NCBI RefSeq assembly: GCF_000143415.4
Contig: NW_003314284.1
Coordinates: 186,001-250,000 of the forward strand
Origin: Selaginella moellendorffii
Lineage: Eukaryota; Plantae; Lycopodiophyta
DNA: 64,000 bases
Reading direction: 5' to 3'
The notes beneath the pieces were generated by a model, which was given only the letters and a program-made list of their open reading frames with translations, was not told where the DNA came from and searched no databases. Every line of letters starts with the position of its first letter. Position 1 is the first letter of the stretch. Both the position numbers and the translations under genes were made by a program. Shown here one piece after another: positions 12,259 to 43,800 of the stretch.

Positions 12259-12561
12259 CTAGAGCCTCGCTTATGGCTCGCTTCGTGCTCATTCCTCGAG
12301 CACTTTGTTGGGAGTTCCACTCCCGCTCTCGACCTTTCAAGTCGGAGCTTTTAGTCCAAACGTGTTACACTCGTTTGGCTTTCGCTTCGGCCACTACCAC
12401 GTGGCACCCTTCCAGCTCCACTTTGGGGCCTAGGGATTTTGTGTCTCACAACTCCACCACCCATAAACAAAGTTCGATGTCCTCATCGAATGGTGAACCA
12501 TTTTATAAAGTAACACCCACATGTGTTACCATTTCCATCTTTGGCGCGTAGCTAATATTTG

Positions 12562-12686
12562 TCAATGGTTTGACATTGAAGGCTCACCATGCCTTCTCCA
12601 TATTCGTCAATGGTTGGACATTGAAGGCTCACCATGCCTTTTGCATATTCCTCAATGGTTTGACACCAAAGGCTCACCATGCCTTA
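12562..12686. repeat. Three tandem copies of an about 45-bp unit in the interior of element C
   Basis: tcaatggtt(t/g)gacattgaaggctcaccatgcctt repeated three times. Confidence 0.85.
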
Positions 12687-16811: not shown

Positions 16812-16815
16812 CGGA

Positions 16816-16854
<39 letters not shown>

Positions 16855-17350
16855 TGTCTCGGTCTCGGTCCCGGTCCCGGTCTCGGTTCCATCTCAGACT
16901 CCATCTCGGACTCCACCTCGGGTCCATCTCGAACTCCACCTCGGGTCCATCTCGGACTCCATCTCGGGTCCATCTCGGACTCCATTTCAAGTCCATCTCG
17001 GACTCCATCTTGGGTCCATCTCAGACTCCATCTCGGGTCCATCTCGGACTCCATCTCGGTCCATCTCGGACTCCATCTCGGACTCCATCTTGGACTCCAT
17101 ATCGGACTCCATCTCGGACTCCATATCGGACTCCATCTCGGACTCCATCTCGGACTCCATATCGGACTCCATTTTGGACTCCATCTCGGACTCCGTATCG
17201 GACTCCATTTCGGGTCCATCTCAGACTCCATCTCGGACTCCATATCGGACTTCACTTCGGGTCCATCTCGGACTCCATATCGGACTTCACTTCGGGTCCA
17301 TCTCGAACTCCATCTCGGACTCCATATCGGACTCCACTTCGGGTCCATCT
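16812..17350. repeat. Same hexamer plus 12-bp satellite in the right LTR of C
   Basis: Copy of 11708-12258. Confidence 0.95.
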
Positions 17351-17547
17351 CTAGAGCCTCGCTTATGGCTCGCTTCGTGCTCATTCCTCGAGCACTTTGT
17401 TGGGAGTTCCACTCCTGCTCTCGACCTTTCAAGTCGGAGCTTTTAGTCCAAATGTGTTACACTCGTTTGGCTTTCGCTTCGGCCACTACCACGTGGCGCC
17501 CTTCCAGCTCCACTTTGGGGCCTATGGATTTTGTGTCTCACAACACC

Positions 17548-18372: not shown

Positions 18373-20260
18373 GCGTTGCTGAAGTCATCAACGTCATCTT
18401 TCATTTGGTCTTCGGATTGTGAGCCGGTGTTCAGGGATCTCAAAGAGTTATTGACAACTCCTCCGGTTTTGGCATATCCTGACTACACTCGACCTTTTAT
18501 TTTGCGCATGGATGCTTCTGACATTGGTCTTAGAGGTGTGTTAATGCAAGAGAGCTCGAGTGTGCCTGGTCAGCGCCATCCCATTGCATATATAAGCTGT
18601 ACATTACAACCAGTGGAGAGGAACTACTCCACGACAGAGAAGGAGTGTTTAGCAGCAGTCTGGGGTTTCGAGAAACTTCATGCATATCTATATGGTTCTC
18701 GGACGTTACTTGAAGGTGACCATGTTGCTGTTACTTCGTTATTGAAGCGGAAGAACCTAGTTGGTCGTACTACTCGGTGGGCTTTGAAACTTCAGATATA
18801 TGATTTTGATGTTGTTCATTGCCCAGGGAGTTCTATGGCTAATGCTGATGCCCTTTCTCGAGCTCCTCTTCCTTCTCCACTCTCTTCTCATGTTTTTGAC
18901 AAGCCTGTTGTTCCAGCATCTGTGGATTTTCTAGACGAGGATTCTGTGCTATCAGCAGTTGCTATACTTGACGTTCAGTGTCCACAAGGTGCATAGCAAA
19001 ATCTACCTTCACTTGATGAGGTTCGCGAGGCTCAAAAGCTTGAGCCGTGGATTCGAAGGCTTCGAGATGGGTTTGAGAATCCTGCATCACTTGCTGATGA
19101 CTTGCCTTTCCGACATTTACATTCTCAATATCGCCTTGAAGATGCCCTTCTTTGTTTTGTGGGGACGGATCCTGATGATCATTTACGGCCGGTGGTGCCT
19201 TCTATCTTTATTCCATAGTTTTTCCATGCTTACCATGATTCTCCTATTCTAGGTGGGCATATGGGACATCATCATGTAATCGAGAAGCTGCGTAGGTCTT
19301 TCTATTGGGCGGAGATGCGATGTGATATTATCCGGTACGTGCGTAACTGCGTTTGGTGCCAAGCTCGTAATACTCCCCCTCGGGCTGCAGAAGGACGGTT
19401 GGAGTCAATTGCAGTTTCCCGTCCGTTTGAGTTGGTGGCGTTTGATCTTATGGGACCTTTTCCACGGTCGACTGCTAGCAATGAGTATGTTATTATTGTT
19501 TTTGACTATTTGACTTGTTGGGTGGAAGTTGGTGCTCTTGCTAGCACCTCTGCAATTGCTGTTGGATACTTCCTCCTCAATCGAGTGGTGTTCCAGCATT
19601 CTTGTCCAGAGTGGATTCTTTCGGATAATGGTCCCACATTTATGGCTGAGGCATTTCATGTTTTGACGTCTCAGTTGGGGATACGCCACACTTTCACGAG
19701 TGCTTATCATCCACAATCAGACAGTCTGGTGGAACAGCTCGTTCGGACATTCAAGGGGATGATTGTGAAGTATATGAACTTTCAGCATTTAGATTGGGAT
19801 GGTTATTTGCCATCTCTTCGGTATGCATATGTCACTAGGGTGCAGAGTTCTATTGGTGCTTCACCATATAAACTCCTATATGGTCATGATCCAATATTAC
19901 CAACAAAGCTGGGTTTACCTTCTCGATTGCCACAAGCTGCGGATGCTAGGTCATGGGATTAGTATTTGACGAGCATTCTTCCACTTGTCCGAGCGGAGTC
20001 TGCCGAACACTTAGGCCGCGTACAAGTGGGACAACAACGGCGGTACAACTCCCATCATCGTCCACCTGCGAAGTACAAAGTGGATGATTTGGTGTTAGTC
20101 CGTTTTCCCCATCTTACGGTACGTGGTTTATCTAAGGGGCTCCTTGCACAGAGGATCAGCCTGCTGGACGTCATGCCGAACCGCATAAACTTATGGTCCA
20201 ACTTGTCGCAACACCCAATACGGTCCTTTCCACTATTGTGCATATGCAGCGGTTAAAATG
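18373..20260 (+). pseudogene. Element A RNaseH - integrase
   Basis: PPVLAYPDYTRPFILRMDASD, ERNYSTTEKECLA, NADALSR; HHCC zinc finger (HDSPILGGHMG...CVWCQ), DLMGP, SDNG, AYHPQSD. Confidence 0.93.
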
Positions 20261-22196: not shown

Positions 22197-24027
22197 TTAC
22201 GAGGCGAGCTGTGTCACAAAGAGAGGCAAGTGCTCCCATTCAATATCAGGAGCTAGATTAAAGAACAACCACTCTAGATTTGGAAGACTGGCAGCCAAAT
22301 CATCCTTGAATTCTGACTGTCCAATGTGTAAATTAGTAAGACCCAGATCTCTAAGAAGTGTGAATGATCCATCCAGGTTGAACAAGTGGATACCACCGCA
22401 GTCAATGTCAAGTGTTTCTAGGCGGTGGGGCAACCATTCAAAGCTGTCATCACTATTTTCACTGTCTTCTACCGATGTAAAACTGTTGAAGCCTGATTGA
22501 GTTCTTAAACATTCGCTTCAAGGGAGCTCTGCTGACGGACTCCACATCAATTTCACATGTTGTTAGGTTGATAAGTTGCCATCGTCCAACGACACTGGCA
22601 AATGCGATGCTGTCTGCCCATAAAACCAATGTTTCAATGCTCCAGTGTCCCCATGCTTTCTGGCACCTTCATTGTACCCTGTGTCATTTCTAGATTTAAA
22701 TGTCTTAGTTTACGTGAAATTCCAGTCAAATCCAAAACTGATGAGTCCTCTTTTGAACTAACATTCAGCCCCAGCTCTTCCAAGTCGGAGAGCTGGGGCA
22801 GTAATGCAATGTTACACTTCATCGGCATCCACCGGGTAGTACATTTTAGATATTTCAGTGATGTCAGGCTGAAAAGCGCATCTGGTAATTCACTCACTTC
22901 TGTTCCTTGAATGTCAAGCACTTGAAGGTTTTTCAGCTTGGATATGCTCTCTGGAATAAAACGCATCTTAGAGCATCGCCACAAGCTCAATACCTTGACA
23001 CCTTGTATGTGATTGATGAAACTGTCATCCACATTAGAAAGTCCTTCACATTTATCCAGAAGTAAGACATCACGCACATGATTATCGGATAGAAAGCTGC
23101 CAACATTCTTTGAGATGAATGAAACTTCAGCAAATGTTGCATCCCGAATGCCAATTGTCCAGTCATATCCGAACAGGCATCCCTTCTCGTGCTCTTGCTG
23201 TGAACCGTACTTCCCTTTTAAGATTCTTATGCACAGTTTGCGTAGCATATCGTGTACAATTATACGATCATCGTCATCCCAAGACTTATTTATCTTGACC
23301 AGGCATCTCCGTTCCAGTTCATTGACAATCGCTGTGGGTGAGAGTTCTGACCCAACCTCCATCCAACATTTCCTCAAGTCAGTGAACTCAATCTCCTCGT
23401 CTTCTGGGAATGCGGCCACATAAAGAAACCACTCTTGCAAGCTTTTCACCCTCATAGTTTCCCAGCTCGTCATAGCTGAACTTCAAGCGCTTGAACATCT
23501 GCTTCTCAACGTCTGGGTCATTGGACAAGTGCAACCTCTTATATCATTCTTCCCACACAAGTGGCCCTTCTCTTCTGTGGACAGCCATGGCACTGCCAAT
23601 CACTTCCAGGGCTAGAGGAAGTCCCTCACATTTTTGAGCTATTTCCTTGGCAAATCCCACAACATCAGGGTCACTGGGTTGTGGATCATGCACACCGAAG
23701 GCAAACTTCCAAAACATCTTTTTGCTTTCGTCCATTGATAGCTGATGCACAGGAAATGCCTTTGCATCCAGGCTGCGCAAAATGCCTTCCTTTCTGGTTG
23801 TCACCAGGATCCGGCCAGAGGATGGCTGTGCTATAAAATCCAGTTCCTTTGCCCAGCTCCAGTCCCAGACATCATCCAGTACCAGCAAGACACGGTTACC
23901 AGCAGCAACATCGTGTGCCAAGTGCTTCATGTCGTCAAGGGTTCCTCTGGCCCTCTCTTTCATTTCACCCCATTCAAGAGCGTTGAGGAGCTGGGCCTTG
24001 AGATCGTCCTCCGAAGCATCTTTCTTC
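22197..24027 (-). pseudogene. NB-ARC-LRR (NLR) paralogue fragment, 5'-truncated at the hAT TIR
   Basis: VLLVLDDVWD, GRILVTTR, GLPLAL, IIVHDML and LRRs, highly similar to 40876-43147; frameshifted; P-loop missing. Confidence 0.9.
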
Positions 24028-25782
24028 CATAGTTGCAGCTAGACATGCAAATGTTCCAACAGGTCGACGTTTAAACGCCGTTTAAAACGTTTTTTTCAGG
24101 ACAATCCAACATTTACATGTTAAAGCCTAAAATGATTAAGAAAACACTAATATTTACTAAAGACACTTTAATCTGATATTAAGTTTATAAAACCTAACCA
24201 AATAACATACTAAAACAAATGAAAGAACAAGTTTTAGTCGTCTTCCGATTTGGTTCCTCAAAATCTTCTTGCAGATCCAAAATCCTCTTCCAATGAGGCT
24301 CCAACTCCAGCTTGTCTATATCAATCTCCAACATCCTCAAACCTTCACTCTCCAGCTTTTGAGCAACCCGCAAGTTTGTGTGAATGTAAACCAGCTTCTC
24401 AACATTTGTGGGAAGCAAGTGGGACCTATGCTTTGTTTGTATCAAGCTCCATGAGCTCTAATTCCTCTCGCATGGAAAAGCACAAACAACTTGGCTTAAA
24501 ATCCGGAGAGCCATGCGACGTAGATCAGGCATCTCTAAACCAAAAGAACTCCACCAGGTTACTGGAAACTTTCTAGTCTCCCGATCTTTGGCAACAGGTA
24601 ACCTTATTTGCCGTCCAAGTTGTTGCCGAAACCTCTCAAACTGTGCCTGCAATCTCAGCTACAAGTCCAGATCACCTCCACTATAAACATGCATGTACTC
24701 CAGCCAGTTCCCGCGTGCCTCATTGTCCAGCTTGTCGTTCTCCGGGTTATCCCCCAGAAACAGAGGATGAAGAGCAAAAGCAGCTCCATGAATGACGTTG
24801 TGCATTTGATACCACCTTGCCTCCTTTAGACCATGTGATTCAAGTAGGAAATCCTTGATTTGTCCCACTTCCTCATGTGCATAAATTCCGTTTCGAGCTC
24901 CCTCATCCATCTTCTCAATCAGCCGATCAACAGCTTCAAAGATGAGGCTTGAAGTCGCCCCCTCCCGATCAGCGAGCCGAAGAACTCAAAGTAAAGGTCC
25001 GAGCAAAATTAACAAATTCTCGCACCGCTCCCAGAACGAGTCATCGAGAACACGAGATCGCAACTCCAGGCCCTCCGGCTTTTTAGACCAGTCAAGTCGC
25101 TCCCATTCTTGGCTCACCACCATTCTTCGAAGCCCAGAGAGATTCGTGGTCTCCAGAAGCTGAGACATCACGAGAAATATAAGCAAACCTCGTGGTCACA
25201 AGCTTTATCAGATCCTGTTTGCAGAAAGTTCTATAAAGAGTTAGAACCCGTGGCTTTGAGGTGATGAAGGAGTTGTCTTCGCACAGCCATCGACCAAAGG
25301 CTGCACCCAAGACAGAGCTCCAATATCTTCGAACAGCAAGTCCATAATGTGGCAAATGCAGCGAACGTGTACAATCTGTGGAAACTCCTGCTGCAAAAGC
25401 TCCCCCATGACCACGCAGTTGCTTGCATTGTCCGTCACCACCTGCACAACGTTTTCCGTGCCAACCTCGGCAATCACTTGTTTCAGCTGCTCAAACAACC
25501 ATGCTCTAGTTTTTTTCGCGTTCTTGCTGTCCACAGCCTTCAGGAAAATTGAGCCTCTCACAGAACTGACCATGAAGTTGATAAAAGACCGCTTCTTGAT
25601 ATCAGACCAGCCATTCGTGACAATGGTACAACCATATGTCCTCCAACTTAGCCGCACATCTTCAAGCCACTTCTGAACGTTGTTGTAGATTTGTTGTAGC
25701 TCAGTTGTCCGCAACTTCTCATATCCCATGAGGTTGTCAATCATTGGACGCCCCACTTTTGCGGCAACTTTCAGCATTCTCT
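24028..25782 (-). mobile_element. hAT transposon 3' half (DUF659 plus dimerisation domain), left inverted copy
   Basis: GCTIVTNGWSD, VVQVVTDNASN, CICH, PVTWWSSFG...ALRILSQ...CERN; TIR CATAGTTGCAGCTA at 24028. Confidence 0.9.
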
Positions 25783-25882: not shown

Positions 25883-27980
25883 TGCCGATGATGGGCATCT
25901 GCTGCTTCAAGCCGCACAGGGTTCAGGGGGCCCAGCAGAATCTATGGTGGCAAGCACAGAGAACTGGTCCAGTGCTGGGACAAGCAGAGCAGCAAAATGC
26001 AGATCCTCTGATGGAAATTTGGTGACATTTTTTGATACTGCTTCGGCTGAGGCACTGGATGATGCTGTTGCAGAGTTCTTCTTTGCCGAGAACATCTCCT
26101 TCAACACAATCCAAAGAGACAACTTGAAGAGAATGCTGAAAGTTGCCGCAAAAGTGGGGCGTCCAGCGATTGACAACCTCATGGGATATGAGAAGTTGCG
26201 GACAACTGAGCTACAGCGAATCTACAACAACGTTCAGAAGTGGCTTGAAGATGTGCGGCTAAGTTGGAGGACATATGGTTGTACCATTGTCACGGATGGC
26301 TGGTCTGATATCAAGAAGCGGTCTTTTATCAACTTCATGGTCAGTTCTGTGAGAGGCTCAATTTTCCTGAAGGTTGTGGACAGCAAGAACACGAAAAAAA
26401 CCGGAGCATGGTTGTTTGAGCAGCTGAAACAAGTGATTGCTGAGGTTGGCACGGAAAACGTTGTGCAGGTGGTGATGAAACAAGTGATTGCTGAGGTTGG
26501 CACGGAAAACGTTGTGCAGGTGGTGATGGACAATGCAAGCAACTGTGTGGTCATGGGGGAGCTTTTGCAGCAGGAGTTTCCACAGATTGTACACGTTCAC
26601 TGCGTTTGCCACATTATGGACTTGCTGTTCGAAGATATTGGAGCTCTGTCTTGGGTGCAGCCTTTCGTCGATGGCTGTGCGAAGACAGTTACCTTCATCA
26701 CCTCAAAACCATGGGTTCTAACTCTTTATAGAACTTTCTGCAAACGCGACCTGATAAAGCCTGTGACCACGAGGTTTGCTTATATTTTTCTCGTGATGTC
26801 TCAGCTTCTGGAGACCACGAATCTCTCTGGGCTTCGAAGAATGGTGGTGAGCCAAGAATGAGAGCGACTTGACTGGTCTAAGAAACCGGAGGGCCTGGAG
26901 CTGCAATCTCGTGTTCTCAATGACTCGTTCTGGGAGCGGTGCGAGAATTTGTTAATTTTGCTCGGACCTTTACTTCGAGTTCTTCAGCTCGCTGATCGGG
27001 AGGGGGCGACTTCAAGCCTCATCTTTGAAGCTGTTGATCGGCTGATCGAGACGATGGATGAGGGAGCTCGAAACGGAATTTATGCACATGAGGAAGTGGG
27101 ACAAATCAAGGATTTCCTACTTGAATCACATGGTCTGAAGGAGGCAAGGTGGTATCAAATGCACAACATCATTCATGGAGCTGCTTTTGCTCTTCATCCT
27201 CTGTTTCTGGGGGATAACCCGGAGAACAACAAGCTGGACAATGAGGCACGCGGGAACTGGCTGGAGTACATGCATGTTTATAGTGGAGGTGATCTGGACT
27301 TGCAGTTGAGATTGCAGGCACAGTTTGAGAGGTTTCGGCACAGCTTGGACAGCAAATAAGGTTACCTGTTGCCAAAGATCGGGAGACTAGAAAGTTTCTA
27401 GTAACCTGGTGGAGTTCTTTTGGTTTAGAGATGCCTAATCTATGTCGCATGGCTCTCCGGATTTTAAGCCAAGTTGTTTGCGCTTTTCCATGCAAGAGGA
27501 ATTAGAGCTCATGGAGCTTGATACAAACAAAGCATAGGTCCCACTTGCTTCCCACAAATGCTGAGAAGCTGGTTTACATTCACACAAACTTGCGGGTTGC
27601 TCAAAAGCTGGAGAGTGAAGGTTTGAGGATGCTAGAGATTGATATAGACAAGCTAGAGTTGGAGCCTCATTGGAAGAGGATTTTGGATTTACAAGAAGCT
27701 TTTGAGGAACCAAATCAAGCTGTTGAGGAGTTTAGTATTGATATAGGATGGAAGATGATTCGGAATCGGAAGACGACTAAAATGGCTTCTTCTTTCATTT
27801 GTTTTAGTATTTTATTTGGTTAGGTTTTATAAACTTAATATCAGATTAAAGTGTCTTCAGTAAATATTAGTGTTTTCTTAATCATTTTAGGCTTTAACAT
27901 GTAAATGTTGGATTGTCCTGAAAAAAACGTTTTAAACGGCATTTAAACGTCAACACATTTTAACGTTAGCTGCAACTATG
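25883..27980 (+). mobile_element. hAT transposon, right copy (transposase with stop, frameshift and a 51-bp internal duplication)
   Basis: GCTIVTDGWSD, duplicated KQVIAEVGTENVVQVVM, CVCH; ends TAGCTGCAACTATG at 27980. Confidence 0.9.
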
Positions 27981-30900
27981 CTAGTGATTGATCGATCGCC
28001 TGGAAATACTTCTTCCACTGATCCGGTCCCGCAAGAAGATCACGATTTCATAGCTCGGCATCCGACATGGCTGCCTCCGATTCACGGCTTGAGCAAAGCA
28101 GTGCCGGATTGTGACCGAGCAGCGTCATCGTCTTTGTCTGCCACATTGATTGCCGCACTGGATCAACTGGCCCGAGCGATTCCCGATTCCCGGGCAACCA
28201 AGAACTGGAAGAGGGCTTACACTGCAATCAAGAGGCTCATGGTAACTTTACTTCCTTCAACTTTGGAGAGTTCTTATGTTCTGTTTCTAGAATATAAGAA
28301 GAACGACGAGGCAGAGTGCTGTCGGGACTGGAGCTTGGAATTTGGAGCCTCTACAGCCCGTCACGCTTATACATTTCGGGCTTCTCTACAATCAGTACGT
28401 GGATAGAAGTTTACCATCCTTCCTGCTATGGTGGCAGGAGAGCCGAGTATATTCTTGTGTTTCTCATATGCTCCCATATGGCAGTGCTTGTCTTTGAAGC
28501 AATGGCGGGGTCTAGGCATGAACGATGGACACATGTGTGGAGTTTCAACATTGATTGCCTGGACGGGCTCATCACAGCGCTTTATACGTAATCGTTGTTT
28601 CCCTCTTCGAGGTTTCCCCTCACACTTGTGTTTGTAGGATTGAAATGGTGTTACGAATTTTGGCTCTTGGTTTTATCAGAGGTCGTCACTGCTACATGCG
28701 GAATCCATACAATAGGCTCGACTTTGTCATTGTTTTCGATTCCTGATAATGTTGAGGTTTTGTATTTGATGGTCGTAAGTGTTTCACCAGCTCTTTGGGA
28801 GGTGCATAACTGCACATGATTTTTTCGCGTGGATAGCCGTGTTCCGCGTGTTTCGGCTAGCGTTGAAGCACGTCACATTTTTTGCCGATGTCATAGTATG
28901 GTTTGTAAATTTCTGATTTGTGCATTGTTAACACTTTACAATAGACCATCATGGCGGCCGTGAAAAAGAGCATTGGTCCTCTCCAAAACGTTATCCTTTT
29001 GACGTTCTTTCTGTTGGTTTTCTATTCTCTACTCGGCACACAGATCTTGCAAAACTCGATGAATCAAAGGTAATCTCGATAGTTCTTATCACGTGATATC
29101 AAAATCCTCCTGGGCAGGTGCTTTCGAATAGCGGAGCAACTTGCTTATCCCATGCGCTTTTGTGACGAAAAAGCTGCTGGCTGCTACGTACGTCCACCAT
29201 TTCAGAACTGTATGATGTGTTTTTTCTATAAGCTCATTCCTTATCCATCTCTTTGTTTGTAGACACACTAGAATCCCAACCATGGAGCGACAGCTTTTGA
29301 TTATCTCTGGTATTCGCTGCTTACCATGTTTCAGGTTTGTGTCACTTCATAGCATCTTATCGCCTTAGCACACTTCAAAGTGGTCACTCTGCAGGTGATA
29401 ACTTTGGAAGGATGGAGCCTCGTCATGCATGATGTGAAGGATGCTGAAGGGGAGCGAGCCAGTAAGGCGTTGACATTGTTTCTTTTATTGCTTACACAAG
29501 CCATTGCACCACAGATTCGTACTTTATGACGTTAATTGTTCTGGGTACATATTTCCTGGCGGACGTTTTCATCGCCGGTATCAGTGGTGTATTTCTTCGT
29601 GTTCGATCAGAGCATCAGGTGCACACTTGTTTACTGATTTCCCATCACCCCCTGTCCCTAGCATGGAGTTCACATATCAACGCTTGACATCACCAAATGA
29701 TCAGGCTTAAGTTAAGCTGTTATTATCCAGGCTTTGCTGAGGAAAGCCCATAGAACCTCGGTAAGTGCTGAAAGACAATATCGTCAAAGCCGACTCGCAC
29801 ATGCCATGGTATAACCGCTTACTCAACAGGTCAAGAAAGGTGTAGCAGAATGTCGCGAGAGCCTTAAGTCGGACACGGACCTCCCTGCGGACTGCCCTTC
29901 AAGCCAGATCAATGAGAGTGCGGTCCAGTAGGTCTTTCAGTCGAAGTATGACGATAGGAGTTCAAGCAGCGTTGACAGTTTCCGGAAAAGGCCGCGACAT
30001 CGTTGAACATCCCAAGTTTGAGTGGGGAGTACTTCTCAGTGTCACCATTAACGTCGTGCTCTTATCGTCCTTCTGGGATGTCAAAACGGTTGTTGCATAC
30101 GCTCAGTATTCATTTCACGACTTCCTTTCTATTCGTTCAGCATGATAAATTTTGTATGCAGACGGGTTGCAAGCAGTAATGCTTTTTGCTTTCAGCGGGG
30201 AACTTCTGCTGCGCTTTCTAGCATATGGTCCTGGCGATTTTCTTGACGATGGTGAGTTCTTTGTTCATGTTGTCTTCTGGTCTGATCCCGAAATTTTCAG
30301 GAATGAATTTGCTGAACTTGATAGTTGTTTTCACATCTATTGTGGCACTCAGTTCTCATTCGTTTCCAAATTTAACATCAATAAAAATTATGCGGTGGTT
30401 TTACTCTTCGAAGAAGTATTTTGCAAAAATGGGGGTCTTACTGGATCCGCTTTAGAGGCCCCACCATCGGTCGTTCCAGCTGCAGAGTCTTCTGAAGCAC
30501 CGCTGTCGCGTCACAGGCGTTCTTCCCAAGTTTTACAGGTTTCTGGTTTTCCGTCTAATATCGGTGAAAGGAGGGGTTCAAGAACCGCACTTCAAGATGC
30601 CGTGATAACTCTGGACGAGATTCTCAGCAGTCCAAAAATTGTCCCCGATTTCATCTGGAGTCTGCAGAAGATCAACTTTGTGGTGAGCACATGCTTATCT
30701 TATTTTGCTCGACATTGTACATTGTTTTGGAGCAGGTCTTTTTGCTAGACTGTTTGATGAAGATCGTTGCACAGGGACTTATTTTGCGCCAGACGCATAC
30801 CTGAGTGACTGGTACAACATCTTGGACTTGTTTATTCTCGTCACCGATGCGCTTATTCTTCTGAAGTATAACGCTGAGGATGAAACTTCCATACCAACCG

Positions 30901-32590
30901 TCGGTGCGTTTACTTCTCTTCGGTCATTTCGTTTCGTGGTTCGGTTTACAGGACTGAGGTCATTATTATCGAATTACCTGTGAAATATAATAATGCAATG
31001 ACCCGACAATATGAACCGAGCATATTGTACCGGCCTCTATGTTAATGACATCGGCATCCTTGCTCCCCGAGCCTGGGTTAATAACGTTTTCCACTTCGAC
31101 GACATCCAGAATGCCCTCCTCAGTATGTTCGCCTGCTCCACTTTCGACAACTGGCTGATGCACTTCATGTATCCTGTCATGGACATCACTAGGGAAGACC
31201 ACCAGCCTGTTCGGAACGCAAGTCCTGTCAACGCCTTGTTTTTCGTGGCATTCTGCTGTATCGGGGGATTTTATATCGTGTTTATCAACGAGTTTGGAAA
31301 AAATTCTGGAGCAGTTCTTCTCACAGAGAGGCAGAAGCTGTGGAGGGACATGAACCGTATCATCCAGAAAACTTATGCTATTCCGCTGGCTCGACGACCA
31401 AGCAATCCCATCCGGGGGATGTGCTTCTACTTGATTCGCAATCTGACATATCAAAAGTGCATGATCCTCGCACTCCTTGGCTACTCTGGGCTACTTGCGA
31501 CTAACTATGCTGGGCAGTCGGCAGTTGTTTCGGACCGGCGTCAGATGGCTCACTGTGCGATTACAACATATTTCCTGCTCGAATCCGTGATGGAGTTCCT
31601 TGGCGACGAGGTACCTCATTCATCTTTTTCTCGATTGTTTTTTGTTTGACCACCTGGTTTTTCCTTTCTCCAGTGGAAGGTCTATAAGAACGAGGTTGCA
31701 CGGCAGATGACGTTTGGACTCTCCATAATGGCCGCCATTGGTCTCTTGGGAAAGAAGGGAACGGTGAGGGGCTATGTCGGCCGCACTGCCTACATTGCTC
31801 AAGTTTTTTGCATCATTCCTCACGTAGTGAGAGTGCGGGTTATTATGCGAACAATGTTCATCTGTTTGCCAACTGTAGCTGAGATACTCGTTCTTCTCGC
31901 AATTTTCATGTATATGTTTGCGGGGATGGCTTTCCAACTCTTCAGTGCAATGAAGGAAGGGACCTGCATTGGCCCGTCTGTCAACTTTCACACTTTCGTC
32001 AACGCTTTCATTAACTGGTCTTGCGTTATGATGGATACCACAATTGATGCACCCGCCTGCACCAACGGTAAAACACTACTCGGTGATGATTGTGGCTATC
32101 CAGAGGGCGGGACTATCTTCTTCACCTTCTTGGTCTTGGTCGGGAGTCACATATTCATGAACTTGTTCGTGGCTGTCATACTGGATGCTGTAACCTTCAG
32201 CCTTTTGAACGAGAACTCTATGGTTATGCCGGAGCACCTGTTAGCGTATCGAAACTTGTGGAGCCAAGAACCATTCGATCCCAAGTAAGCCACTTACTTA
32301 CGTTCAAGTCCTTGTGGAACTAACTTTACAATCGTCCAGTGCTATGGGATACATTGGCATGCACAAGCTGCGACGATTTGTAAACGCCCTCGGTGACCCG
32401 CTGAGCCGGCGCTACAAGTCCGCAACCCAATGGTTTGGCGTGTGTTTGTGGAGTCCTCCCAATCTCGTTTTCTTCTTTGTTCTGCTCAGGTACGTGAGAA
32501 TAGAGTACGAGGTGATGAGTTTTCGAGTTCCAAACAAAGGAATCCCTTTCAAGGAGCTGCTGGAACGCTGACGCTGTATAAGATGGGACC
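27978..32590 (+). pseudogene. Four-domain voltage-gated Ca2+/Na+ channel alpha-subunit-like gene (multi-exon, damaged)
   Basis: DI: EMVLRILALGF...YMRNPYNRLDF, S4 AVFRVFRL, pore TMFQ/VITLEGW (29401). DII: ELLLRFLAYG, with S5-P-S6 apparently missing. DIII: YLSDWYNILDL, SLRSFRFVVRF, FDDIQNALLSMFACSTFDNW, linker LLTERQKLW. DIV: VNFHTF...DDCG...FMNLFVAVILD, then EF-like LW...FDP..MGYI. Confidence 0.88.
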
Positions 32591-32710
32591 AACTGTAAGT
32601 AGCTGTTATTCCAACCTTTTGATACTGACGCTTGGTTCCCGTGTTTAACGGGAGGCTAATCCGAGCCAAGCGTAAGTATCAAAAGGTTGGAATAGCAGCT
32701 ACTTACAGTT
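32591..32710. repeat. Foldback inverted repeat at an inversion breakpoint
   Basis: aactgtaagtagctgttattccaaccttttgatactgacgcttgg...ccaagcgtaagtatcaaaaggttggaatagcagctacttacagtt, about 45-bp arms with few mismatches. Confidence 0.85.
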
Positions 32711-32789
32711 GCCTCCCGTTAAACACCATCCTGATTCATTCTCTCTCCGCTTACCTGGCGATGATGTGGACAATGATTGGAGGGTGCGG

Positions 32790-34389
32790 CAGCATTTCCA
32801 TGACAACATTGTGTGGATCACTGTGAAGAAAGATGCTTCGGAGGACGATCTCAAGGAGCTCCTCAACGCTCTTGAATGGGGTGAAATGAAAGAGAGGATT
32901 TTATAGCAGGGCCATCCTCTGGCCAGATCCTGGTGACAACCAGAAAGGAAGGCATTTTGCATCCGGATGCAAAGGCATTTGCTGTGCATGAGCTATCAAT
33001 GGACGAAAGCAAAAAGATGTTTTGGAAGTTTGCCTTCAGTGTGCATGATCCACAACCCAGTGACCCTGATGTTGTGGGATTTGCCAAGAAAATAGCTCGA
33101 AAATGTGAGGGACTTCCTCTCGCTCTGGAAGTGATTGGCAGTGCCATGGCTGTCCACAGAAGAGAAGGGCCACATGTGTGGGAAGAACGATATAAGAGGT
33201 TGCACTTGTCCAATGACCCAGATGTTGAGAAGCAGATGTTCAAACGCTTGAAGTTCAGCTATGACGAGCTGGGAAACTATGAGGGTGAAAAGCTGCAAGA
33301 GAGCTTTCTCTATGTGGCTGCATTCCCACACAAATTAATTGAATTTAGTTCCTTGAGCAAATGTTGGATGGAGGTTGGGTCAGAACTCTCACCCACAGCG
33401 ATTGTCAATGAACTGGAACGGAGATGCCTGGTCAAGATAGATAAGTCTTGGGGGTATGAAGAAGCTCCTGGTTATATAATCGTACACGATATGCTACCAT
33501 CTGACTCACTTTTGTTCCTCGAATGTCAAGCACTTGAAGGTTTTTCAGCTTGGAAATGCTCTCTGGAATAAAATGGATCCTAGAGCATCGCCACAAGCTC
33601 AATACCTTGACACCTTGTATGTGATTGATAAGACTGTCATCCACATTAGAAAGTCCTATACATTCATCCATAAGTATAGCGCTTTTCAGCCTGACATCAC
33701 TGAAATATCTAAAATCTACTTAGTGGACGCCCATAAAGTGTAACATTGCATTACTGCCCCAGCTCTCCAACTTGGAAGAGCTGGAGCTGAGCCTTGATTC
33801 AAAAGAGGAGTCATCAGTTGTGGATTTGACTGGAATTTCACGTAAACTAAGACTTCTAGATCTAAGAATGACACATGGTACAATGAAGGTGCCAGAAAGC
33901 ATGGGGACATTGGAGCACATTGAAACATTGGTTTTACATGCAAACAACATTGACTTTGCCAGTTTCGTTGGGTTATGGCAACTTGTCAACCTAACAAAAT
34001 GTCTAATTCGTGTGAGAACCGTCAGCAGAGCTACTTGGAAACAAATGTTTATGAAATCAATCAAGCTTCAACATTTTTCCATCGTTGGGGTAGAAGACAG
34101 TGAAAGTAGTGATGACAGCTTCGAATGGTTGCAACTACAATATTTAGACATCCGTGATATCATAAACCTATCTTGGTTGCCCCATAGAAACATTTTTTTA
34201 TTAAATGCAATCGTATCCACTTCTTCAACCTGGATGGATCATTCCCAAGTCTTGAAAGGCTGTGGCTTACTAATCTACGCATTGCACAGTCAAAATTCAA
34301 GGATGATTTGGCTGCCAGTCTTCCAAATCTGAAAGAGTTGCACTTTTGGCTAGCTCCTGATATTGAATGGGAGCAATTGCCTCTCTTCA
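32790..34389 (+). pseudogene. Inverted NB-ARC-LRR fragment of the NLR, with a nested micro-inversion at about 33498-33672
   Basis: GLPLAL, IIVHDML and LRRs on +. The segment MDECIGLSNVDDSLINHIQG...LDIRGTKVSQ lies on -. Confidence 0.88.
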
Positions 34390-34490
34390 CGAGAGCCTGC
34401 ATTTTCGTCGCAGCGCCCTGGATGTACACGGCCTGGATCCGCTTCTCACGCTCGATGCGCAGAGTGAGAGGCAACCCCTGCGTTAATCCG
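34390..34490 (-). pseudogene. Displaced IQ-motif exon of the channel
   Basis: GLPLTLRIEREKRIQAVYIQGAATKMQALV, reverse complement of about 40545-40643. Confidence 0.85.
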
Positions 34491-34509
34491 AGGCACGCTC
34501 CCATTCGCC

Positions 34510-39365: not shown

Positions 39366-40740
39366 CATATCATCCAGAAACTTATGCGATTCTGCTGGCT
39401 CGACGACCAAGCAATCCCATCCGGGGGATGTGCTTCTACTTGATTCGCAATCCTACATATCAAAAGTGCATGATCCTCGCACTCCTACTTGTGACTAACT
39501 ATGCTGGCTAGTCAGCTGTTTCACACATGGCTCATTGTGAGATTACAAGTACCTCATTCATCTTTTTCTCGATTGTTTTTTGTTTGACCACCTGGTTTTT
39601 CCTTTCTCCAGTGAAAGGTCTATAAGAACGAGGTTGCACGGCAGATGGAGTTTGAACTCTCCATAATGGCCGCCATTGGTCTCATGGGAAAGAAGGGAAC
39701 GGTGAGGGGCTATGTCGGCTGCACTGCCTACATTGCTCGAGTTTTCTGCATCATTCCTCACGTAGCGAGAGCACGGGTTATTATGCAAACAATGATCATC
39801 TGTTTGCCAACTGTAACTGAGATACTTGCTCTTCTCGCAATTTTCATGTATATGTTCCGTGGGGATGGCGTTCCAACTCTTCAGTGCAATGAAGGGACCT
39901 GCATTGGCCCATCTGTCAACTTTCGCACTTTCATCAACGCTTTCATCATGGTGTTTCAGGTAAAGGCTTGCTTTTCCATTCGCTTGATAACTGGTCTTGC
40001 CTTATGATGGATACCACAATTAATGCACCCGCCTGCACCAACGGTAAAACACTACTCAGCGATGATTGTGGCTATCCAGAGGGCAGGAGCCAGTTCATGG
40101 CTGTCATACTGGATGCTGTAACCTTTGGCCTTGTGAACGAGAATTCTATAGTCATGCCAGAGCACTGGTTAGCATATCAAACCTTGTGGAGCCAAGAACC
40201 ATTTGATCCCACCTAAGCCACTTACAGTCAAGTCCTTGTAGAACTAACTTCACAATCGTCCAGTGCTACAGGATACATTGGCATGCACAAGCTGCCACGA
40301 TTTGTAAACGCCCTCAGTGACCTGCTGGCCCGGCACTACATGTCCGCGACCCAATGGTTTGGCGTGTGTTTGCGGACTCCTCCCAATCTCGTTTTCTTCT
40401 TTGTTCTGGTCAGGTACATGAGAATAGAGTACGAGGTGATGAGTTTTCGAGTTCCAAACAAAGGAATCGAGCTGCTGGAAACGCTGACGCTGTGTAAGAT
40501 CGGACCAAGCTCCTATTCCAAGCTTTTGATACTTGCGTTTGGGTCGGATTACCGCAGGGGTTGCCTCTCACTCTGCACATCGAGCGTGAGAAGCGGATCC
40601 AGGCCGTGTACATCCAGGGTGCTGCGACAAAAATGCAGGCTCTAGTGAGAGGTTTCCTGGGGAGGATAAGAGCTGGCAAAGGTGATGTGAGCAAAACCGA
40701 GGTAGCATTGGAATCGACAAGAGCAAACCCGAGGTGCTAG
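39366..40740 (+). pseudogene. Second copy of the four-domain channel 3' part (DIII-IV linker, DIV, EF-like region, IQ motif)
   Basis: Matches 31358-32590; retains DIV pore MVFQ...LDNWSC and IQ-like AATKMQALVRGFLGR at about 40621-40665. Confidence 0.87.
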
Positions 40741-40875
40741 AGATTGCCAGGGACGTGAGAGGCGAAGGTCTCCTGGTGGAAGAGTGCTGCAGTCGCATTA
40801 TTGTATATTAATTTAGAGGAAAATATGTCAAACTATGTAGAGGTGGGACGTTCGAATACCAAAACGCTTTGGAAA

Positions 40876-43800
40876 TTAAAACTTACGTATCTTGAGATTG
40901 GGGCGGTCCTCAAGCCAAGGTGGAATTTTCATGCCTTCCGGGCAGTCTAGCCTTTTCAGCCTGGGAAATGCGCCCTGGCTGTGATTGTGGGACCACAGTG
41001 CATCGTTAAGTATCATGCTTGGCCTAAAAATTCCAAGACGTTTCAAACCTGGCAGCGATGCAATGGACGATGGAACTATACTCTCATCACAGCTCAAGTG
41101 CACGGTTTCTATATCAGTCATTTGATCTGATGGCTCAAAAAAATCATTTTGCATCTTCTTGCTCGATACTGAAAGAAATTGAACCTTGAGTGATGACCTC
41201 TCGGTTGGCAACAACAGTCTCTTTATGCAACCCGTTATTCTCAGAACCCCGAGGCGATTGGGGAGCTGTGCCACAAAGAGAGGCAAGTGCTCCCATTTAA
41301 TATCAGGAGCTAGCTCAAACTCCAACTTCTTCAGATTTGGAAAACTGGCAGCAAAATCATCCTTGAATTCTGACTGTGCAATGTGTAGATTAGTAAGTAT
41401 CAGAAATTCAACACCTGGGAATGGTCCATGGACCAGGTTGAAGAAGTGGATACGACTGCAGTCAATTTCAAGTTTTTCTAGGCGGTGGGGCAACCAAGAG
41501 AGGTTTATAATTTCACGGATGCGTAAATATCGTAGTTGCAGCCATTCAAAGCTGTCATCATTATTTTCACTGTCTTCTACCCCAGAAATGGAAAAATCTT
41601 TAAGCCTGATTGATTTCTTAAACATTCGCTTCAACGGAAGTCTACTGACGGATTCCATATGAATTTCACATGTTCTTAGGTTGACAAGTTGCCATAGCCC
41701 AACGAAACTGGCAAAGTCGATATTGTTTGCATGTAAAACCAATGTTTCAATGTGCTCCAGTGTCCCCATGCTTTCTGGCACCTTCATTGTACCATGTGTC
41801 ATTCTTAGATCTAGAAGTCTTAGTTTACCTGAAATTCCAGTCAAATCCACAACTGATGACTCCTCTTTTGAATCAAGGGTCAGCTCCAGCTCTTCCAAGT
41901 TGGAGAGCTGGGGAAGTAATGCAATGTTACACTTTATCGGCGTCCACTGAGTAGATTTTAGATATTTCAGTGATGTCAGGCTGAAAAGTGCATCTGGTAG
42001 TTGACTCACTTTTGTTCCTCGAATGTCAAGCACTTGAAGGTTTTTCAGCTTGGAAATGCTCTCTGGAATAAAACGGATCCTATAGCATCGCCACAAGCTC
42101 AATACCTTGACACCTTGTATGTGATTGATAAGACTGTCATCCACATTAGAAAATCCTTTACATTCATCCATAAGTAAGACATCTCGCACATGATTATCAG
42201 ATAAAAAGCTGCCAACATTCTTTGAGATGAATGAGACTTTAGCAAATGTTGCATCCTGAATGCCAATTGGCCAATCATATCCAAACAGGGATCCCTTCTC
42301 GTGCTCTTGCTGTGGACCGTACTTCCCTTTTAAGATTTTTATGCACAGTTTGCGTAGCATATCGTGTACGATTATATAACCAGGAGCTTCTTCATCCCTC
42401 AAAGACTTATATATCTTGACCAGGCATTTCCGTTCCAGTTCATTAACAATCGCTGTGGGTGAGAGTTCTGACCCAACCTCCATCCAACATTTACCCAACT
42501 CAGTAAACTCAATCGACCTATCTTCTGGGAATGCAGCCACATAGAGAAAGCACTCTTGCAGCTTTTCACCCTCATAGTTTCCCAGCTCGTCATAGCTGAA
42601 CTTCAAGCGCTTGAACATCTGCTTCTCAACGTCTGGGTCATTGGACAAGTGCAACCTCTTATACCGTTCTTCCCACACATGTGGCCCTTCACTTCTGTGG
42701 GCAGCCATGGCACTGCCAATCACTTCCAGAGCGAGAGGAAGTCCCTTACATTTTCGAGCTATTTTCTTGGCAAATCCCACAACATCAGGGTCACTGGGTT
42801 GTGGATCATGCACACCAAAGGCAAACTTCCAAAACATCTTTTTGCTTTCGTCCATTGATAGCTGATGCACAGGAAATGCCTTTGCATCCAGACTGCGCAA
42901 AATGCCTTCCTTTCTGGTTGTTACCAGGATCCGGCCAGAGCATGGCCCTGCTATAAAATCCAGTTCCTTTGCCCAGCTCCAGTCCCAGACATCATCCAGT
43001 ACCAGCAAGACACGGTTACCACCAGCAACATCGCGTGCCAAGTGCTGCATGTCGTCAAGGCTTCCTTTGGCCCTCTCTTTCATTTCACCCCATTCAAGAG
43101 CGTTGAGGAGCTGGGCCTTGAGATCGTCCTCCGAAGCATCTTTCTTCACAGTGATCCACACAATGTTGTCATGGAAATGCTCCCGCACCCTCTCGTCATT
43201 GTGCGCGCAGCTTGCGAGGGTGGTTTTTCCACACCCTCCCATTCCCAACAGTCCAACCCATTTGCTACGGGCTTCAGGATCCAAGAGGGCATTCACCACC
43301 TCATCCAGCAGTTGCTCATGGGCCCCAAACATGGCCTCAGGAACAACACGCCGTACATATTTTTTTGCAGGGCCTCTGTCTTGCGGGGAACTCCGTACGG
43401 CGAAGCTAGTGCTCGGCTTTATCACTCTCAACTCTTCTCGCTCGTACCTTTCCATTTTCGGAAGGAGATCGCCCTCGTAGCTGTGTATCAGCTTCGAGAT
43501 CTCGCCATAACGCTTCTCCCTGTGAAAGATCCACAGATATTTTAGCTTTACTGTTAGAGCTCTTGTGTAAGCTTACTGTGATCCCAGCAGTGCTTGCGCC
43601 TCGTCGTTCCATTTTGTGACAAGATCAAGACACTCCTCGGCTCCATCAGAATAGCGGAACTCTGGATTCCGGTGCTTGTGAGTATGAAACTTGTTAAGCA
43701 AGGCCTGGATGCTGGCCCCCCCCTTTTCCAGCATCGCAATGTTCACATTCAGCTCGTGCCCGTGACTTTCGATCTGCGACAGGAGATCCTGGTAGGAGCT

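What the first reader, a model, noticed from the sequence alone, without database searches (positions are those of the whole stretch)
27978..32590. Four-domain voltage-gated Ca/Na-type channel gene in a land-plant-like genome
Seen: four homologous repeats, Arg-spaced S4 segments, pore loops TLEGW (DI), TFDNW (DIII) and LDNW (DIV, from the second copy), an EF-like region and an IQ motif. The filter is acidic, E-?-D-D, suggesting Ca2+ selectivity. Established: such channels occur in animals and green algae (Chlamydomonas flagellar CAV2) and are absent from flowering plants. Inference: this is a relic of the flagellated-sperm Ca2+ system. This copy is decaying (DII pore deleted, stops), so it is either a loss in progress or a shadow of an intact paralogue.
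Basis: partly seen in the sequence, partly recalled or inferred. Interest (0 to 1): 0.8.

Follow-up and report, generated by a model that had tools for sequence, protein, structure and literature searches.

The report
Decayed four-domain channel copies, Selaginella
This stretch of the spikemoss Selaginella moellendorffii genome holds two broken, non-functional duplicates of an intact animal-style four-repeat calcium-type channel gene about 100 kb away: the channel family is real in this land plant, but this locus is only its wreckage.

Summary
Window 27978-32638 (+) holds colinear remnants of all four repeats of a Cav/Nav-type channel, with the pore motifs TLEGW and TFDNW. A second 3' fragment lies at 39368-41122.

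The window is Selaginella moellendorffii scaffold GL377588.1:186001-250000 (exact match). Both fragments are unprocessed pseudogenes of one intact gene. Its alleles are XP_024534439.1, 102 kb away on the same scaffold, and XP_024544215.1 on GL377623.1. The gene has 23 exons, four Ion_trans repeats and an E-E-D-D filter.

Copy A keeps 16 whole parental introns. It lacks exon 1, has 2 stop codons and 7 frameshifting indels, and has lost the repeat II pore module, repeat III S1-S2 and S5, and the repeat IV filter. Its last exon is inverted. Substitutions are spread evenly over codon positions and introns (about 4%).

At least two further dead copies lie just upstream of the window. All copies sit in a tandem array of channel-fragment plus NLR-gene units.

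RNA laid on the locus carries letters of the intact gene or of sister copies, not of copy A. So this is a "shadow of an intact paralogue", not a loss in progress.

The scan had already reported three intact genes of this family elsewhere in this genome. Reviews still say that land plants lack such channels.

The parts
27978..32638 (+). Copy A: a 5'-truncated unprocessed pseudogene of the S. moellendorffii four-domain channel gene (XP_024534439.1 / XP_024544215.1). It runs from the parent's intron 1 to its intron 22.
   Evidence: blastn to parent loci L003 and L005 gives five colinear blocks at 89-98% identity. 1115 of 1191 projected codons are identical to the parent.
28445..29621 (+). Remnant of repeat I (S1-S6), with the pore motif TLEGW at 29401-29415.
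   Evidence: Protein-to-DNA alignment and codon projection on the parent. Pfam Ion_trans matches the pieces 28555-28746 and 28951-29073.
29269..29271 (+). TAG stop replacing parent residue E346 (repeat I outer loop).
   Evidence: Codon projection on the parent.
29843..29845 (+). TAG stop replacing parent residue Q472 (I-II linker).
30008..30428 (+). Repeat II S1-S4 only, with a 5-nt frameshifting deletion at 30074. At 30428|30429, 745 nt of the parent are missing: the end of exon 14, exons 15 and 16, and the start of exon 17. That removes S5, the pore loop, S6 and the proximal II-III linker (parent residues 634-833).
30429..30974 (+). Part of the II-III linker and repeat III S2-S4. At 30641|30642, 259 nt of the parent are missing (residues 905-990, including repeat III S1). 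There is a 1-nt deletion at 30782.
   Evidence: Pfam Ion_trans matches 30705-30983.
30975..30991 (+). 17 nt standing in place of 106 parental nt. This removes the repeat III S4-S5 linker and S5 (residues 1087-1121). The stretch 30975-31010 also carries stop codons.
   Evidence: Reads show 106 letters between the two sides of this joint.
30992..32011 (+). Repeat III pore (TFDNW at 31140-31154) and S6, with an 18-nt in-frame deletion at 31277. Then the III-IV linker and repeat IV S1-S5. Intron 18 is kept at 31611-31673.
32011..32012 (+). Junction of a 75-nt deletion: 27 coding nt plus the whole of intron 19. It removes the repeat IV pore helix and the filter residue (parent motif TTLD).
   Evidence: The loose ends of reads at 32012 carry the parental letters.
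32012..32594 (+). Repeat IV S6 and the EF-like proximal C-terminus (exons 20-22). Introns 20 and 21 are kept. A 1-nt frameshifting deletion lies at 32564.
32595..32711 (.). Start of intron 22 (32595-32638), followed by an inverted duplicate of the exon 22 / intron 22 boundary (32657-32711). This is the left breakpoint of a roughly 1.8-kb inversion.
   Evidence: L003 15964-16018 matches 32711-32657 at 96%. The sequence was also read directly.
34387..34495 (-). Displaced, inverted end of intron 22 and start of the last exon, which holds the IQ-like stretch. The rest of the last exon is missing.
   Evidence: L003 16007-16115 matches 34495-34387 at 98%. tblastn places P0002 residues 1656-1683 here.
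39368..41122 (+). Copy B: a second pseudogene fragment covering the parent's exon 18 to the 3' flank. It has stop codons at 39509 and 39612 and many deletions. It keeps LDNW (39983-39994) and an IQ-like stretch (40552-40734).
32896..34387 (+). NLR fragment (C-terminal half of NB-ARC plus LRR) inside the inverted segment of unit A. It is homologous to the intact NLR gene of unit B.
   Evidence: Pfam. Self-blast against 42961-41276.
40876..43455 (-). Intact 859-aa NB-ARC-LRR open reading frame, convergent with copy B. It is the partner gene of the repeated channel-fragment + NLR unit.
26128..27980 (+). Transposase-like element (DUF659) whose end abuts the 5' breakpoint of copy A. An inverted copy lies at 24028-25782, across an assembly gap.

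Best explanation
Copy A (27978-32638) and copy B (39368-41122) are dead, DNA-level duplicates (unprocessed pseudogenes) of one intact Selaginella moellendorffii gene for a four-domain channel with an E-E-D-D filter.

The parent. It lies at GL377588.1:105668-111953, 102 kb from copy A and in the opposite orientation. Its other haplotype is on GL377623.1.

History (inferred from shared changes and from the layout). One copy of the gene, together with its flanks, landed beside an NLR resistance gene. The channel + NLR unit was then multiplied in tandem, as NLR clusters commonly are. This gave at least four copies: D and C just upstream of the window, and A and B inside it. Each copy then decayed on its own by deletions, frameshifts, stop codons and, in A, an inversion of the 3' end.

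Consequence. Copy A cannot make a channel. It lacks the first exon, the pore module of repeat II, S1-S2 and S5 of repeat III, and the filter of repeat IV.

The family. The working family members are the parent and three more paralogous loci. By homology they should be voltage-sensing, Ca2+-permeable channels. This step is inferred, not shown.
For: Species and place:
- The 859-aa NLR ORF of the window is an exact gene product of GCA_000143415.2 scaffold GL377588.1. 22,580 nt around it are 100% identical.

The parent:
- P0169 is 90-97% identical to the ORF pieces of copy A.
- Its locus L003 and the allelic locus L005 align to copy A in five colinear blocks.
- L003 and L005 share the same neighbouring genes and are 97.7% identical, so they are two haplotypes of one locus.
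- The parent has 23 exons with introns of 45-72 nt and four Ion_trans stretches.

Not a retrocopy:
- 16 whole parental introns are kept at the same places.

Disabling changes:
- Exon 1 is missing, and there are 2 stop codons.
- 7 frameshifting small indels lie at 28333, 28374, 29763, 30074, 30782, 31011 and 32564.
- Deletions of 745, 259, 89 (net), 18 and 75 nt.
- The last exon is inverted.

Relaxed constraint:
- Substitutions are 3.9%, 2.7% and 4.6% at codon positions 1, 2 and 3, against 4.4% in introns.
- dN/dS is 0.43 for A and 0.49 for B.
- Of the amino-acid changes that could be polarised, 35 fell in copy A and 4 in the parent. For copy B the counts are 16 and 1.
- Protein-tree end branches are 0.048 (A) and 0.09 (B), against 0.005 for the parent.

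The array:
- Copies D and C on L007 also carry stops and frameshifts.
- A, B and D share 16-22 derived substitutions.
- A and B share two indels in intron 21.
- The NLR flanks of the units are 88-97% alike.

RNA:
- Of 201 raw RNA reads laid, 190 are only 95-99% alike.
- They carry the letters that copy A lacks: the 18 nt at 31277, an A at 32563, the TTLD codons at 32012, and the spliced last exon.
- These strings are exact matches to L003 and L005, and partly to copies C and D.
Against: - A minority of RNA reads lack the parental insertions: 2 of 16 at 30781 and 2 of 13 at 32563. 11 of the 201 reads are at least 99% alike. Weak transcription of copy A is therefore not excluded.
- RefSeq built short protein models over sister copies C and D: XP_024534454.1 (149 aa) and a 390-aa model.
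- The DNA tree is unrooted. A single origin of all four copies is therefore compatible with the data rather than proven. Copy C shares only 6 changes with the other copies.
- At 30781 every contig of the DNA run carries the extra T that the window lacks. That one frameshift could be an assembly error.
Confidence: 0.93

Rival explanations
1. Copy A is a live gene that makes a shortened channel-like protein or a regulatory RNA.
For: Open frames of 193 and 212 aa survive in repeats III-IV. A few RNA reads fit copy A's own letters. RefSeq models exist on the sister copies.
Against: - There is no first exon or upstream region of the parent.
- Two stops, seven frameshifts and four large deletions leave no repeat intact.
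- Substitutions are as frequent in codons as in introns.
- No gene was called on copy B or on the part of copy A from 30876 onwards, the stretch covered by locus L004.
- No RNA read could be assigned to copy A, and most carry letters it lacks.
Confidence: 0.04
2. The locus is a processed retrocopy of a channel mRNA.
For: About 1500 codons sit in only 4.6 kb, which at first looked intron-free.
Against: The parent itself has introns of only 45-72 nt. Copy A keeps 16 of them whole, at the same positions and about 96% identical. Copy C also carries about 500 nt of the parent's upstream flank.
Confidence: 0.005
3. Copy A is the other haplotype's allele of the intact gene, or an assembly artefact of it.
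For: This assembly holds both haplotypes. Copy A is about 96% identical to the intact gene. The window has four 100-N gaps.
Against: - The true allelic pair is L003 and L005, which share the same neighbours (PPR, ribosomal L34, DNA ligase) and are 97.7% identical.
- Copy A has other neighbours (a transposase-like element and NLR genes) and lies on the same scaffold as L005.
- Contigs of the DNA run cover 31277 without the 18 nt. At 32563 most of the depth (267 of 375) lacks the extra A.
Confidence: 0.02
4. The locus shows the channel family being lost from this plant (loss in progress).
For: Four decayed copies lie in one region.
Against: - The parent locus carries a full four-repeat gene model on both haplotypes, and the three other paralogous loci carry models on two scaffolds each, taken as haplotypes.
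- The parent's protein branch is ten times shorter than those of the copies.
- RNA with the parent's letters and with spliced joints is present in several studies.
Confidence: 0.01
5. The sequence is a two-domain TPC1 relative, or it comes from a non-plant contaminant.
For: None was found.
Against: - The best 54 solved-structure matches of the parent are all four-domain Cav, Nav or NALCN chains (Cav1.1 at E 1e-97).
- The next matches are bacterial one-domain channels at E 1e-10. No TPC chain is among the best 60 (for the window's own ORFs).
- The scaffold carries NB-ARC-LRR genes, PPR genes and other plant genes.
Confidence: 0.005

Closest known systems
The S. moellendorffii gene encoding XP_024534439.1 (GL377588.1:105668-111953) and its allele XP_024544215.1 (GL377623.1). 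RefSeq names them 'voltage-dependent L-type calcium channel subunit alpha-1S/1F-like'.
   Same: The same gene by descent. Substitution identity is about 96% in exons and introns alike. The intron positions are the same. The pore motifs TLEGW, TFDNW and LDNW are the same.
   Different: The parent is complete: 1695-1698 aa, 23 exons, four Ion_trans repeats and an E-E-D-D filter. RNA carrying its letters is present. The window copies lack exon 1 and whole pore and sensor segments, and they carry stops and frameshifts.
Animal high-voltage-activated calcium channels (Cav1 and Cav2 alpha-1 subunits; for example rabbit Cav1.1, PDB 5GJV).
   Same: Four 6-TM repeats in one chain. They are the best solved-structure matches (E 1e-97). 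The match runs colinearly through the III-IV linker, the EF-like region and an IQ-like stretch.
   Different: - Their filter is E-E-E-E, against E-E-D-D here (established knowledge for Cav1/2).
- The land-plant clade stands apart from animal Cav1/2 and NALCN in the tree.
- Identity is only about 27%.
- No auxiliary-subunit sites were tested.
Animal T-type channels (Cav3).
   Same: An E-E-D-D selectivity filter (established knowledge for Cav3; reviewed in PMC5379919, which was listed but not read).
   Different: Cav3 structures score lower than Cav1 and Cav2 (5e-83 against 1e-97). No Cav3 sequence was in my tree, so the shared filter may be convergent. An earlier report of this scan (s1-402732) concluded that the family is not T-type. 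I did not test that.
Green-algal four-domain channels: Chlamydomonas flagellar CAV2, and the Ostreococcus tauri protein that UniRef names 'CCH1'.
   Same: The sister group of the land-plant clade in my tree is a set of environmental proteins. One of them (P0176) shares a 90% cluster with Ostreococcus tauri XP_003074195.2. This fits vertical descent within the green lineage.
   Different: CAV2 itself was not available for comparison. Identity to the algal group is about 33%.
Plant two-pore channel TPC1.
   Same: The Ion_trans fold, and presence in land plants.
   Different: TPC1 has two repeats; this family has four in one chain. No TPC chain appears among the best 60 structure matches.
Unprocessed pseudogenes carried along in tandemly amplified NLR clusters.
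   Same: A gene fragment sits next to an NLR gene and is multiplied with it by local duplication. Each copy then decays independently.
   Different: The passenger here is a channel type that reviews say land plants do not have (PMC5824947, PMC6259924, PMC11085791).

Membership tests
[quoted passage not shown] | Four homologous 6-TM Ion_trans repeats in one polypeptide, in colinear order. | tested here: met
   The parent P0169 has 4 Ion_trans stretches. Copy A keeps remnants of all four in order. One uninterrupted ORF runs from the repeat III pore into repeat IV.
[quoted passage not shown] | A pore loop with a selectivity-filter residue in each repeat. | tested here: not met
   The parent has E, E, D, D (TLEGW, TAESW, TFDNW, TLDNW). 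Copy A keeps only those of repeats I and III. Those of repeats II and IV are deleted. Copy A is therefore a relic of a member, not a working member.
[quoted passage not shown] | S4 segments with basic residues at about every third position. | tested here: inconclusive
   Read directly. Repeat I S4 has R-x-x-R-x-x-R in the parent, but the first R is W in copy A and three residues are lost. The S4 segments of repeats II-IV have basic residues at spacings of 3 to 5. Voltage sensing was not tested.
[quoted passage not shown] | Closer to four-domain channels than to two-domain or one-domain channels. | tested here: met
   PDB searches. Tree.
[quoted passage not shown] | An intact reading frame that can give a channel. 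| tested here: not met
   2 stops, 7 frameshifting indels, 4 large deletions, exon 1 missing and the last exon inverted.
Cav1/Cav2-type C-terminus | An EF-hand-like (GPHH) region followed by an IQ calmodulin-binding motif. | tested here: inconclusive
   The matches are below Pfam's cut-offs: GPHH E 0.002 and IQ E 0.002 in the parent, and IQ E 0.005 in copy B. Nothing was found for the 32-aa inverted piece of copy A. IQ passes the cut-off in the paralogues P0002 and P0167.
Cav3 (T-type) | Groups with Cav3 in a tree; has the gating brake in the I-II linker. | not tested
   No Cav3 sequence was at hand for the tree. Only the E-E-D-D filter is shared. Cav3 structures score below Cav1 and Cav2.
Processed pseudogene (retrocopy) | The parent's introns are absent. 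| tested here: not met
   16 whole parental introns are retained, giving 923 aligned intron positions at 4.4% divergence.
Unprocessed (duplicated) pseudogene | A DNA-level copy with introns, disabling changes, and neutral-like substitution relative to an intact parent. | tested here: met
Unprocessed (duplicated) pseudogene | No transcript or product of its own. | tested here: inconclusive
   Most RNA reads carry letters of the parent or of a sister copy. 2 of 13 to 2 of 16 reads at two indel sites do not.

The most novel reading that the evidence does not exclude
The dead copies may not be inert. In each unit the channel fragment runs convergently into an NLR gene. In unit B the last 82 codons of the NLR frame (40876-41122) lie inside the stretch that aligns to the channel gene's 3' flank on GL377623.1. 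If both strands are transcribed, double-stranded RNA would form. The array could then feed small RNAs that act on the intact channel gene or on the NLRs, tying a resistance-gene cluster to a putative sperm channel.
Probability: 0.04. Interest if true: 0.55.

Novelty: new member of a known kind. Interest (0 to 1): 0.3.

Why it matters
By itself the locus is ordinary gene wreckage. Its value is as a pointer and as a record.

As a pointer, it led to a family of intact four-domain, E-E-D-D-filter channel genes:
- four loci in S. moellendorffii;
- homologues in Diphasiastrum, Ceratopteris, Ginkgo, Marchantia, Riccia and Ceratodon.

Reviews up to 2024-2025 still state that land plants lack such channels (PMC5824947, PMC6259924, PMC6509283, PMC11085791). 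Every plant in that list makes swimming sperm. The family is therefore a concrete candidate for the Ca2+ entry step in plant sperm motility, and it can be tested in Marchantia. The scan had already reported the intact genes of this genome, so this report adds little to that point.

As a record, it adds a history. The gene was duplicated recently (about 4% divergence). The copy was swept along in the tandem growth of an NLR cluster, and four copies decayed independently by deletion. This shows how fast unselected DNA is trimmed in this compact genome. It also warns that the short RefSeq 'calcium channel' protein models in this cluster are built on pseudogenes.

Tried and rejected
- Retrocopy. 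I suspected it at first because the locus is so compact. I rejected it once the parent's 45-78-nt introns were mapped and found again in copy A.
- XP_024536113.1 (P0001) as parent. It was the first best hit in the 50%-clustered library, at 68%. It is a different paralogue. The true parent was hidden inside that cluster and appeared only in the word search.
- 'All RNA comes from the parent'. I weakened this claim after finding sister copies C and D, which share several of the diagnostic strings.
- The NLR tail as derived from the channel's 3' flank. I left this open because the matching stretch is present downstream of the gene on GL377623.1 but not at the allelic place on GL377588.1. It may therefore be a mobile repeat.
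- Literature. A search for the Marchantia gene ids found nothing. Searches for any paper describing these channels in land plants found only statements that they are absent.
- A look-up of the scan's findings by sequence was blank.
- Not attempted: structure prediction (not needed for a pseudogene), and comparison with Cav3, Nav, CAV2 and streptophyte-algal sequences (none were at hand under a name).
Full report
**What is in the sequence**

On the + strand between 27978 and 32638 there is a run of short open frames. Five of them match Pfam Ion_trans. They line up, in order, with repeats I to IV of solved four-domain channels.
- The 212-aa ORF at 31011-31649 aligns without a break from the repeat III pore, through S6 and the III-IV linker, into repeat IV S1-S2 of rabbit Cav1.1 (E 6e-16).
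- The ORF at 31707-32288 aligns to repeat IV S4-S6 and the start of the C-terminal domain of Cav2.2 and Nav1.6.

TLEGW is at 29401-29415 and TFDNW at 31140-31154. LDNW is in a second, partial copy at 39368-41122.

**Which genome**

The longest ORF of the window is an 859-aa NB-ARC-LRR frame at 40876-43455 (-). It is an exact gene product of Selaginella moellendorffii assembly GCA_000143415.2, scaffold GL377588.1. The 22,580 nt fetched around it are 100% identical to the window. The window is therefore GL377588.1:186001-250000.

**What the copies derive from**

The exhaustive protein search with ORF 31011-31649 gave Selaginella, Ginkgo, Marchantia and Riccia proteins as best hits. The word search then showed four paralogous groups of S. 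moellendorffii proteins.

One of them is P0169 (XP_024544215.1, 1695 aa). It is 90-97% identical to the pieces of copy A.
- Its gene (locus L003 on GL377623.1) has 23 exons with introns of 45-72 nt.
- The protein has four Ion_trans stretches.
- Its best structure matches are Cav1.1 (E 1e-97), then Cav2, Cav3, Nav and NALCN. Only bacterial one-domain channels follow. No TPC chain is in the best 60.

A second protein of the same 90% cluster is XP_024534439.1. It is encoded on the window's own scaffold at 105668-111953 (locus L005). L005 has the same neighbouring genes as L003 and is 97.7% identical over 11 kb. L003 and L005 are therefore the two haplotypes of one locus. The intact parent lies 102 kb from copy A, on the opposite strand.

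**Anatomy of copy A**

Copy A aligns to the parent in five colinear blocks.
- It starts inside the parent's intron 1, exactly where a transposase-like (DUF659) element ends at 27980. Exon 1 and the promoter are therefore absent.
- It keeps 16 whole parental introns at the same positions. It is a DNA-level duplicate, not a retrocopy.

Relative to the parent it has lost:
- 745 nt at 30428|30429, which removes repeat II S5, pore and S6 plus part of the linker (residues 634-833);
- 259 nt at 30641|30642, which removes residues 905-990, including repeat III S1;
- 106 nt replaced by 17 nt at 30975-30991, which removes the repeat III S4-S5 linker and S5;
- 18 nt at 31277, inside repeat III S6;
- 75 nt at 32011|32012, which removes intron 19 and the nine codons holding the repeat IV filter.

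It also carries TAG stops at 29269 and 29843. It has seven frameshifting small indels, at 28333, 28374, 29763, 30074, 30782, 31011 and 32564.

After exon 22 the gene breaks off in intron 22. A 55-nt inverted duplicate of the exon 22 / intron 22 boundary follows at 32657-32711. The start of the last exon, with the IQ-like stretch, lies inverted at 34495-34387, behind an NLR fragment. Copy B has the same parts in the uninverted order. Copy A's 3' end was therefore flipped by an inversion of about 1.8 kb.

**Is it under selection?**

Substitution divergence from the parent is even across site classes: 3.9%, 2.7% and 4.6% at codon positions 1, 2 and 3, and 4.4% in introns.
- dN/dS is 0.43 for A and 0.49 for B. 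That is about what a neutral copy paired with a constrained parent should give.
- The other Selaginella paralogues were used to polarise amino-acid changes. 35 fell on copy A against 4 on the parent. For copy B the counts are 16 against 1.
- In the protein tree the end branches are 0.048 (A), 0.09 (B) and 0.005 (parent).

The copies evolve without constraint. The parent does not.

**The array**

A 149-aa RefSeq protein of the parent's cluster (XP_024534454.1) led to locus L007 (GL377588.1:157553-178214), just upstream of the window. L007 holds two more copies.
- Copy D runs from exon 12 to the 3' end.
- Copy C is nearly full length and includes about 500 nt of the parent's upstream flank.

Each is followed by an NLR gene in the same arrangement as in the window. 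Both carry stops and frameshifts of their own. In a DNA alignment, A, B and D share 16-22 derived substitutions. All copies share 6. The two parental alleles group together. A and B also share two indels in intron 21.

The simplest history is as follows. It is inferred, because the tree is unrooted. One duplicate of the gene landed next to an NLR gene. It was multiplied with that gene by tandem duplication. Each copy was then trimmed independently.

**RNA**

Runs labelled as one organism hold parts of the stretch. I laid one DNA run, two assembled RNA runs and one run of raw RNA reads on 27900-32700.
- The RNA runs, but not the DNA run, show GT-AG joints at the conserved introns, for example 29331-29392, 31608-31672 and 32284-32340.
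- First mates fall almost all on the - strand, which in most stranded libraries means RNA of the + (gene) sense.
- Of the 201 raw reads laid, 190 are only 95-99% alike.
- The reads fill copy A's gaps: the 18 nt at 31277, an A at 32563, 106 letters at 30974-30992, the TTLD codons at 32012, and the last exon spliced on after 32595.

These strings are exact matches to L003 and L005. Several are also present in copies C or D. The RNA therefore comes from the intact gene, and perhaps from sister copies. Nothing could be assigned to copy A. At two indel sites, 2 of 16 and 2 of 13 reads lack the parental letter, so faint transcription of copy A is not excluded.

**Family and literature**

In a tree of repeats III-IV the land-plant proteins form one clade (SH-aLRT 99). 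Inside it, bryophytes and vascular plants separate much as the species do.
- The clade stands apart from animal Cav1/2 and NALCN.
- It is sister to a set of environmental proteins. One of these shares a 90% cluster with an Ostreococcus tauri protein.
- The plants that have the family are Marchantia, Riccia, Ceratodon, Diphasiastrum, Selaginella, Ceratopteris and Ginkgo. All make swimming sperm.
- No flowering plant or conifer appeared among the 120 listed proteins (of 160) with E at most 1e-20.

Reviews from 2018 to 2025 state that embryophytes lack four-domain channels (PMC5824947, PMC6259924, PMC6509283, PMC11085791, PMC12455266). I found no paper describing them.

This scan had already reported three intact genes of the family on other pieces of this genome (s1-402732, s1-431145, s1-380501). 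My results agree with those notes on the species, the filter and the distribution. I checked those three points myself.

**Verdict**

Of its two alternative readings, 'shadow of an intact paralogue' is correct and 'loss in progress' is not. The sperm link and Ca2+ selectivity remain inferences from distribution and from the filter. The locus itself is an ordinary, recently formed and heavily deleted unprocessed pseudogene. It is of modest interest as a passenger of NLR-cluster growth, and as a caution about short RefSeq 'calcium channel' models in this region.

Noticed in passing
L007 1-4275 and 8151-14652 (GL377588.1:157553-161827 and 165703-172204), 14-28 kb upstream of the window: Two more decayed copies of the same channel gene (D and C), each followed by an NLR gene. 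RefSeq protein models are built over them: XP_024534454.1 (149 aa) and a 390-aa model that spans from copy D to copy C.
   Followed up: partly
L002 8083-14381 (GL377592.1): The RefSeq model XP_024536113.1 (1102 aa, starting in the I-II linker) looks partial. The DNA aligns to the 1736-aa paralogue over nearly its full length (residues 15-1733), with no stop and with all 22 intron positions. It is probably a full-length four-domain gene.
   Followed up: partly
window 40876-41122: The last 82 codons of the intact 859-aa NLR frame (- strand) lie in sequence that also occurs just downstream of the channel gene on GL377623.1 (L003 16372-16621, about 88% identical). It does not occur at the allelic place on GL377588.1. 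It is either a co-opted flank or a mobile repeat.
   Followed up: partly
window 24028-25782 and 26128-27980: Two copies of a DUF659 transposase-like element lie in inverted orientation (90% identical) around a 100-N gap, with their tails pointing outward. Copy A's 5' breakpoint abuts one tail, and an NLR fragment (22203-24027) abuts the other. This could be a real rearrangement hot spot or an assembly artefact.
   Followed up: no
window 32590-32638 and 32657-32711: A near-perfect inverted repeat of about 50 nt, separated by 18 nt. It is made of the exon 22 / intron 22 boundary and marks an inversion breakpoint.
   Followed up: partly
window 11708-12585 and 16809-17547; also L001 22261-23627: Arrays of a tandem repeat inside a longer repeated element. 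The element (window 12645-15511) is 84% identical to DNA next to the paralogous channel gene on GL377691.1. It is a dispersed Selaginella repeat family.
   Followed up: no
window 19261-19962 (+): A retroelement integrase ORF (Integrase_H2C2 plus rve).
   Followed up: no
proteins P0176 / XP_003074195.2: The nearest group to the land-plant channels outside land plants includes an Ostreococcus tauri protein that UniRef names 'CCH1'. This hints that the family descends vertically within green plants.
   Followed up: partly
window 29071-29136, run X4: One assembled RNA contig carries a letter (G in ...GGACAGGCAAC...) that, among the loci at hand, only copy C has. Copy C may be transcribed, or the letter may be a strain polymorphism of the parent.
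   Followed up: partly
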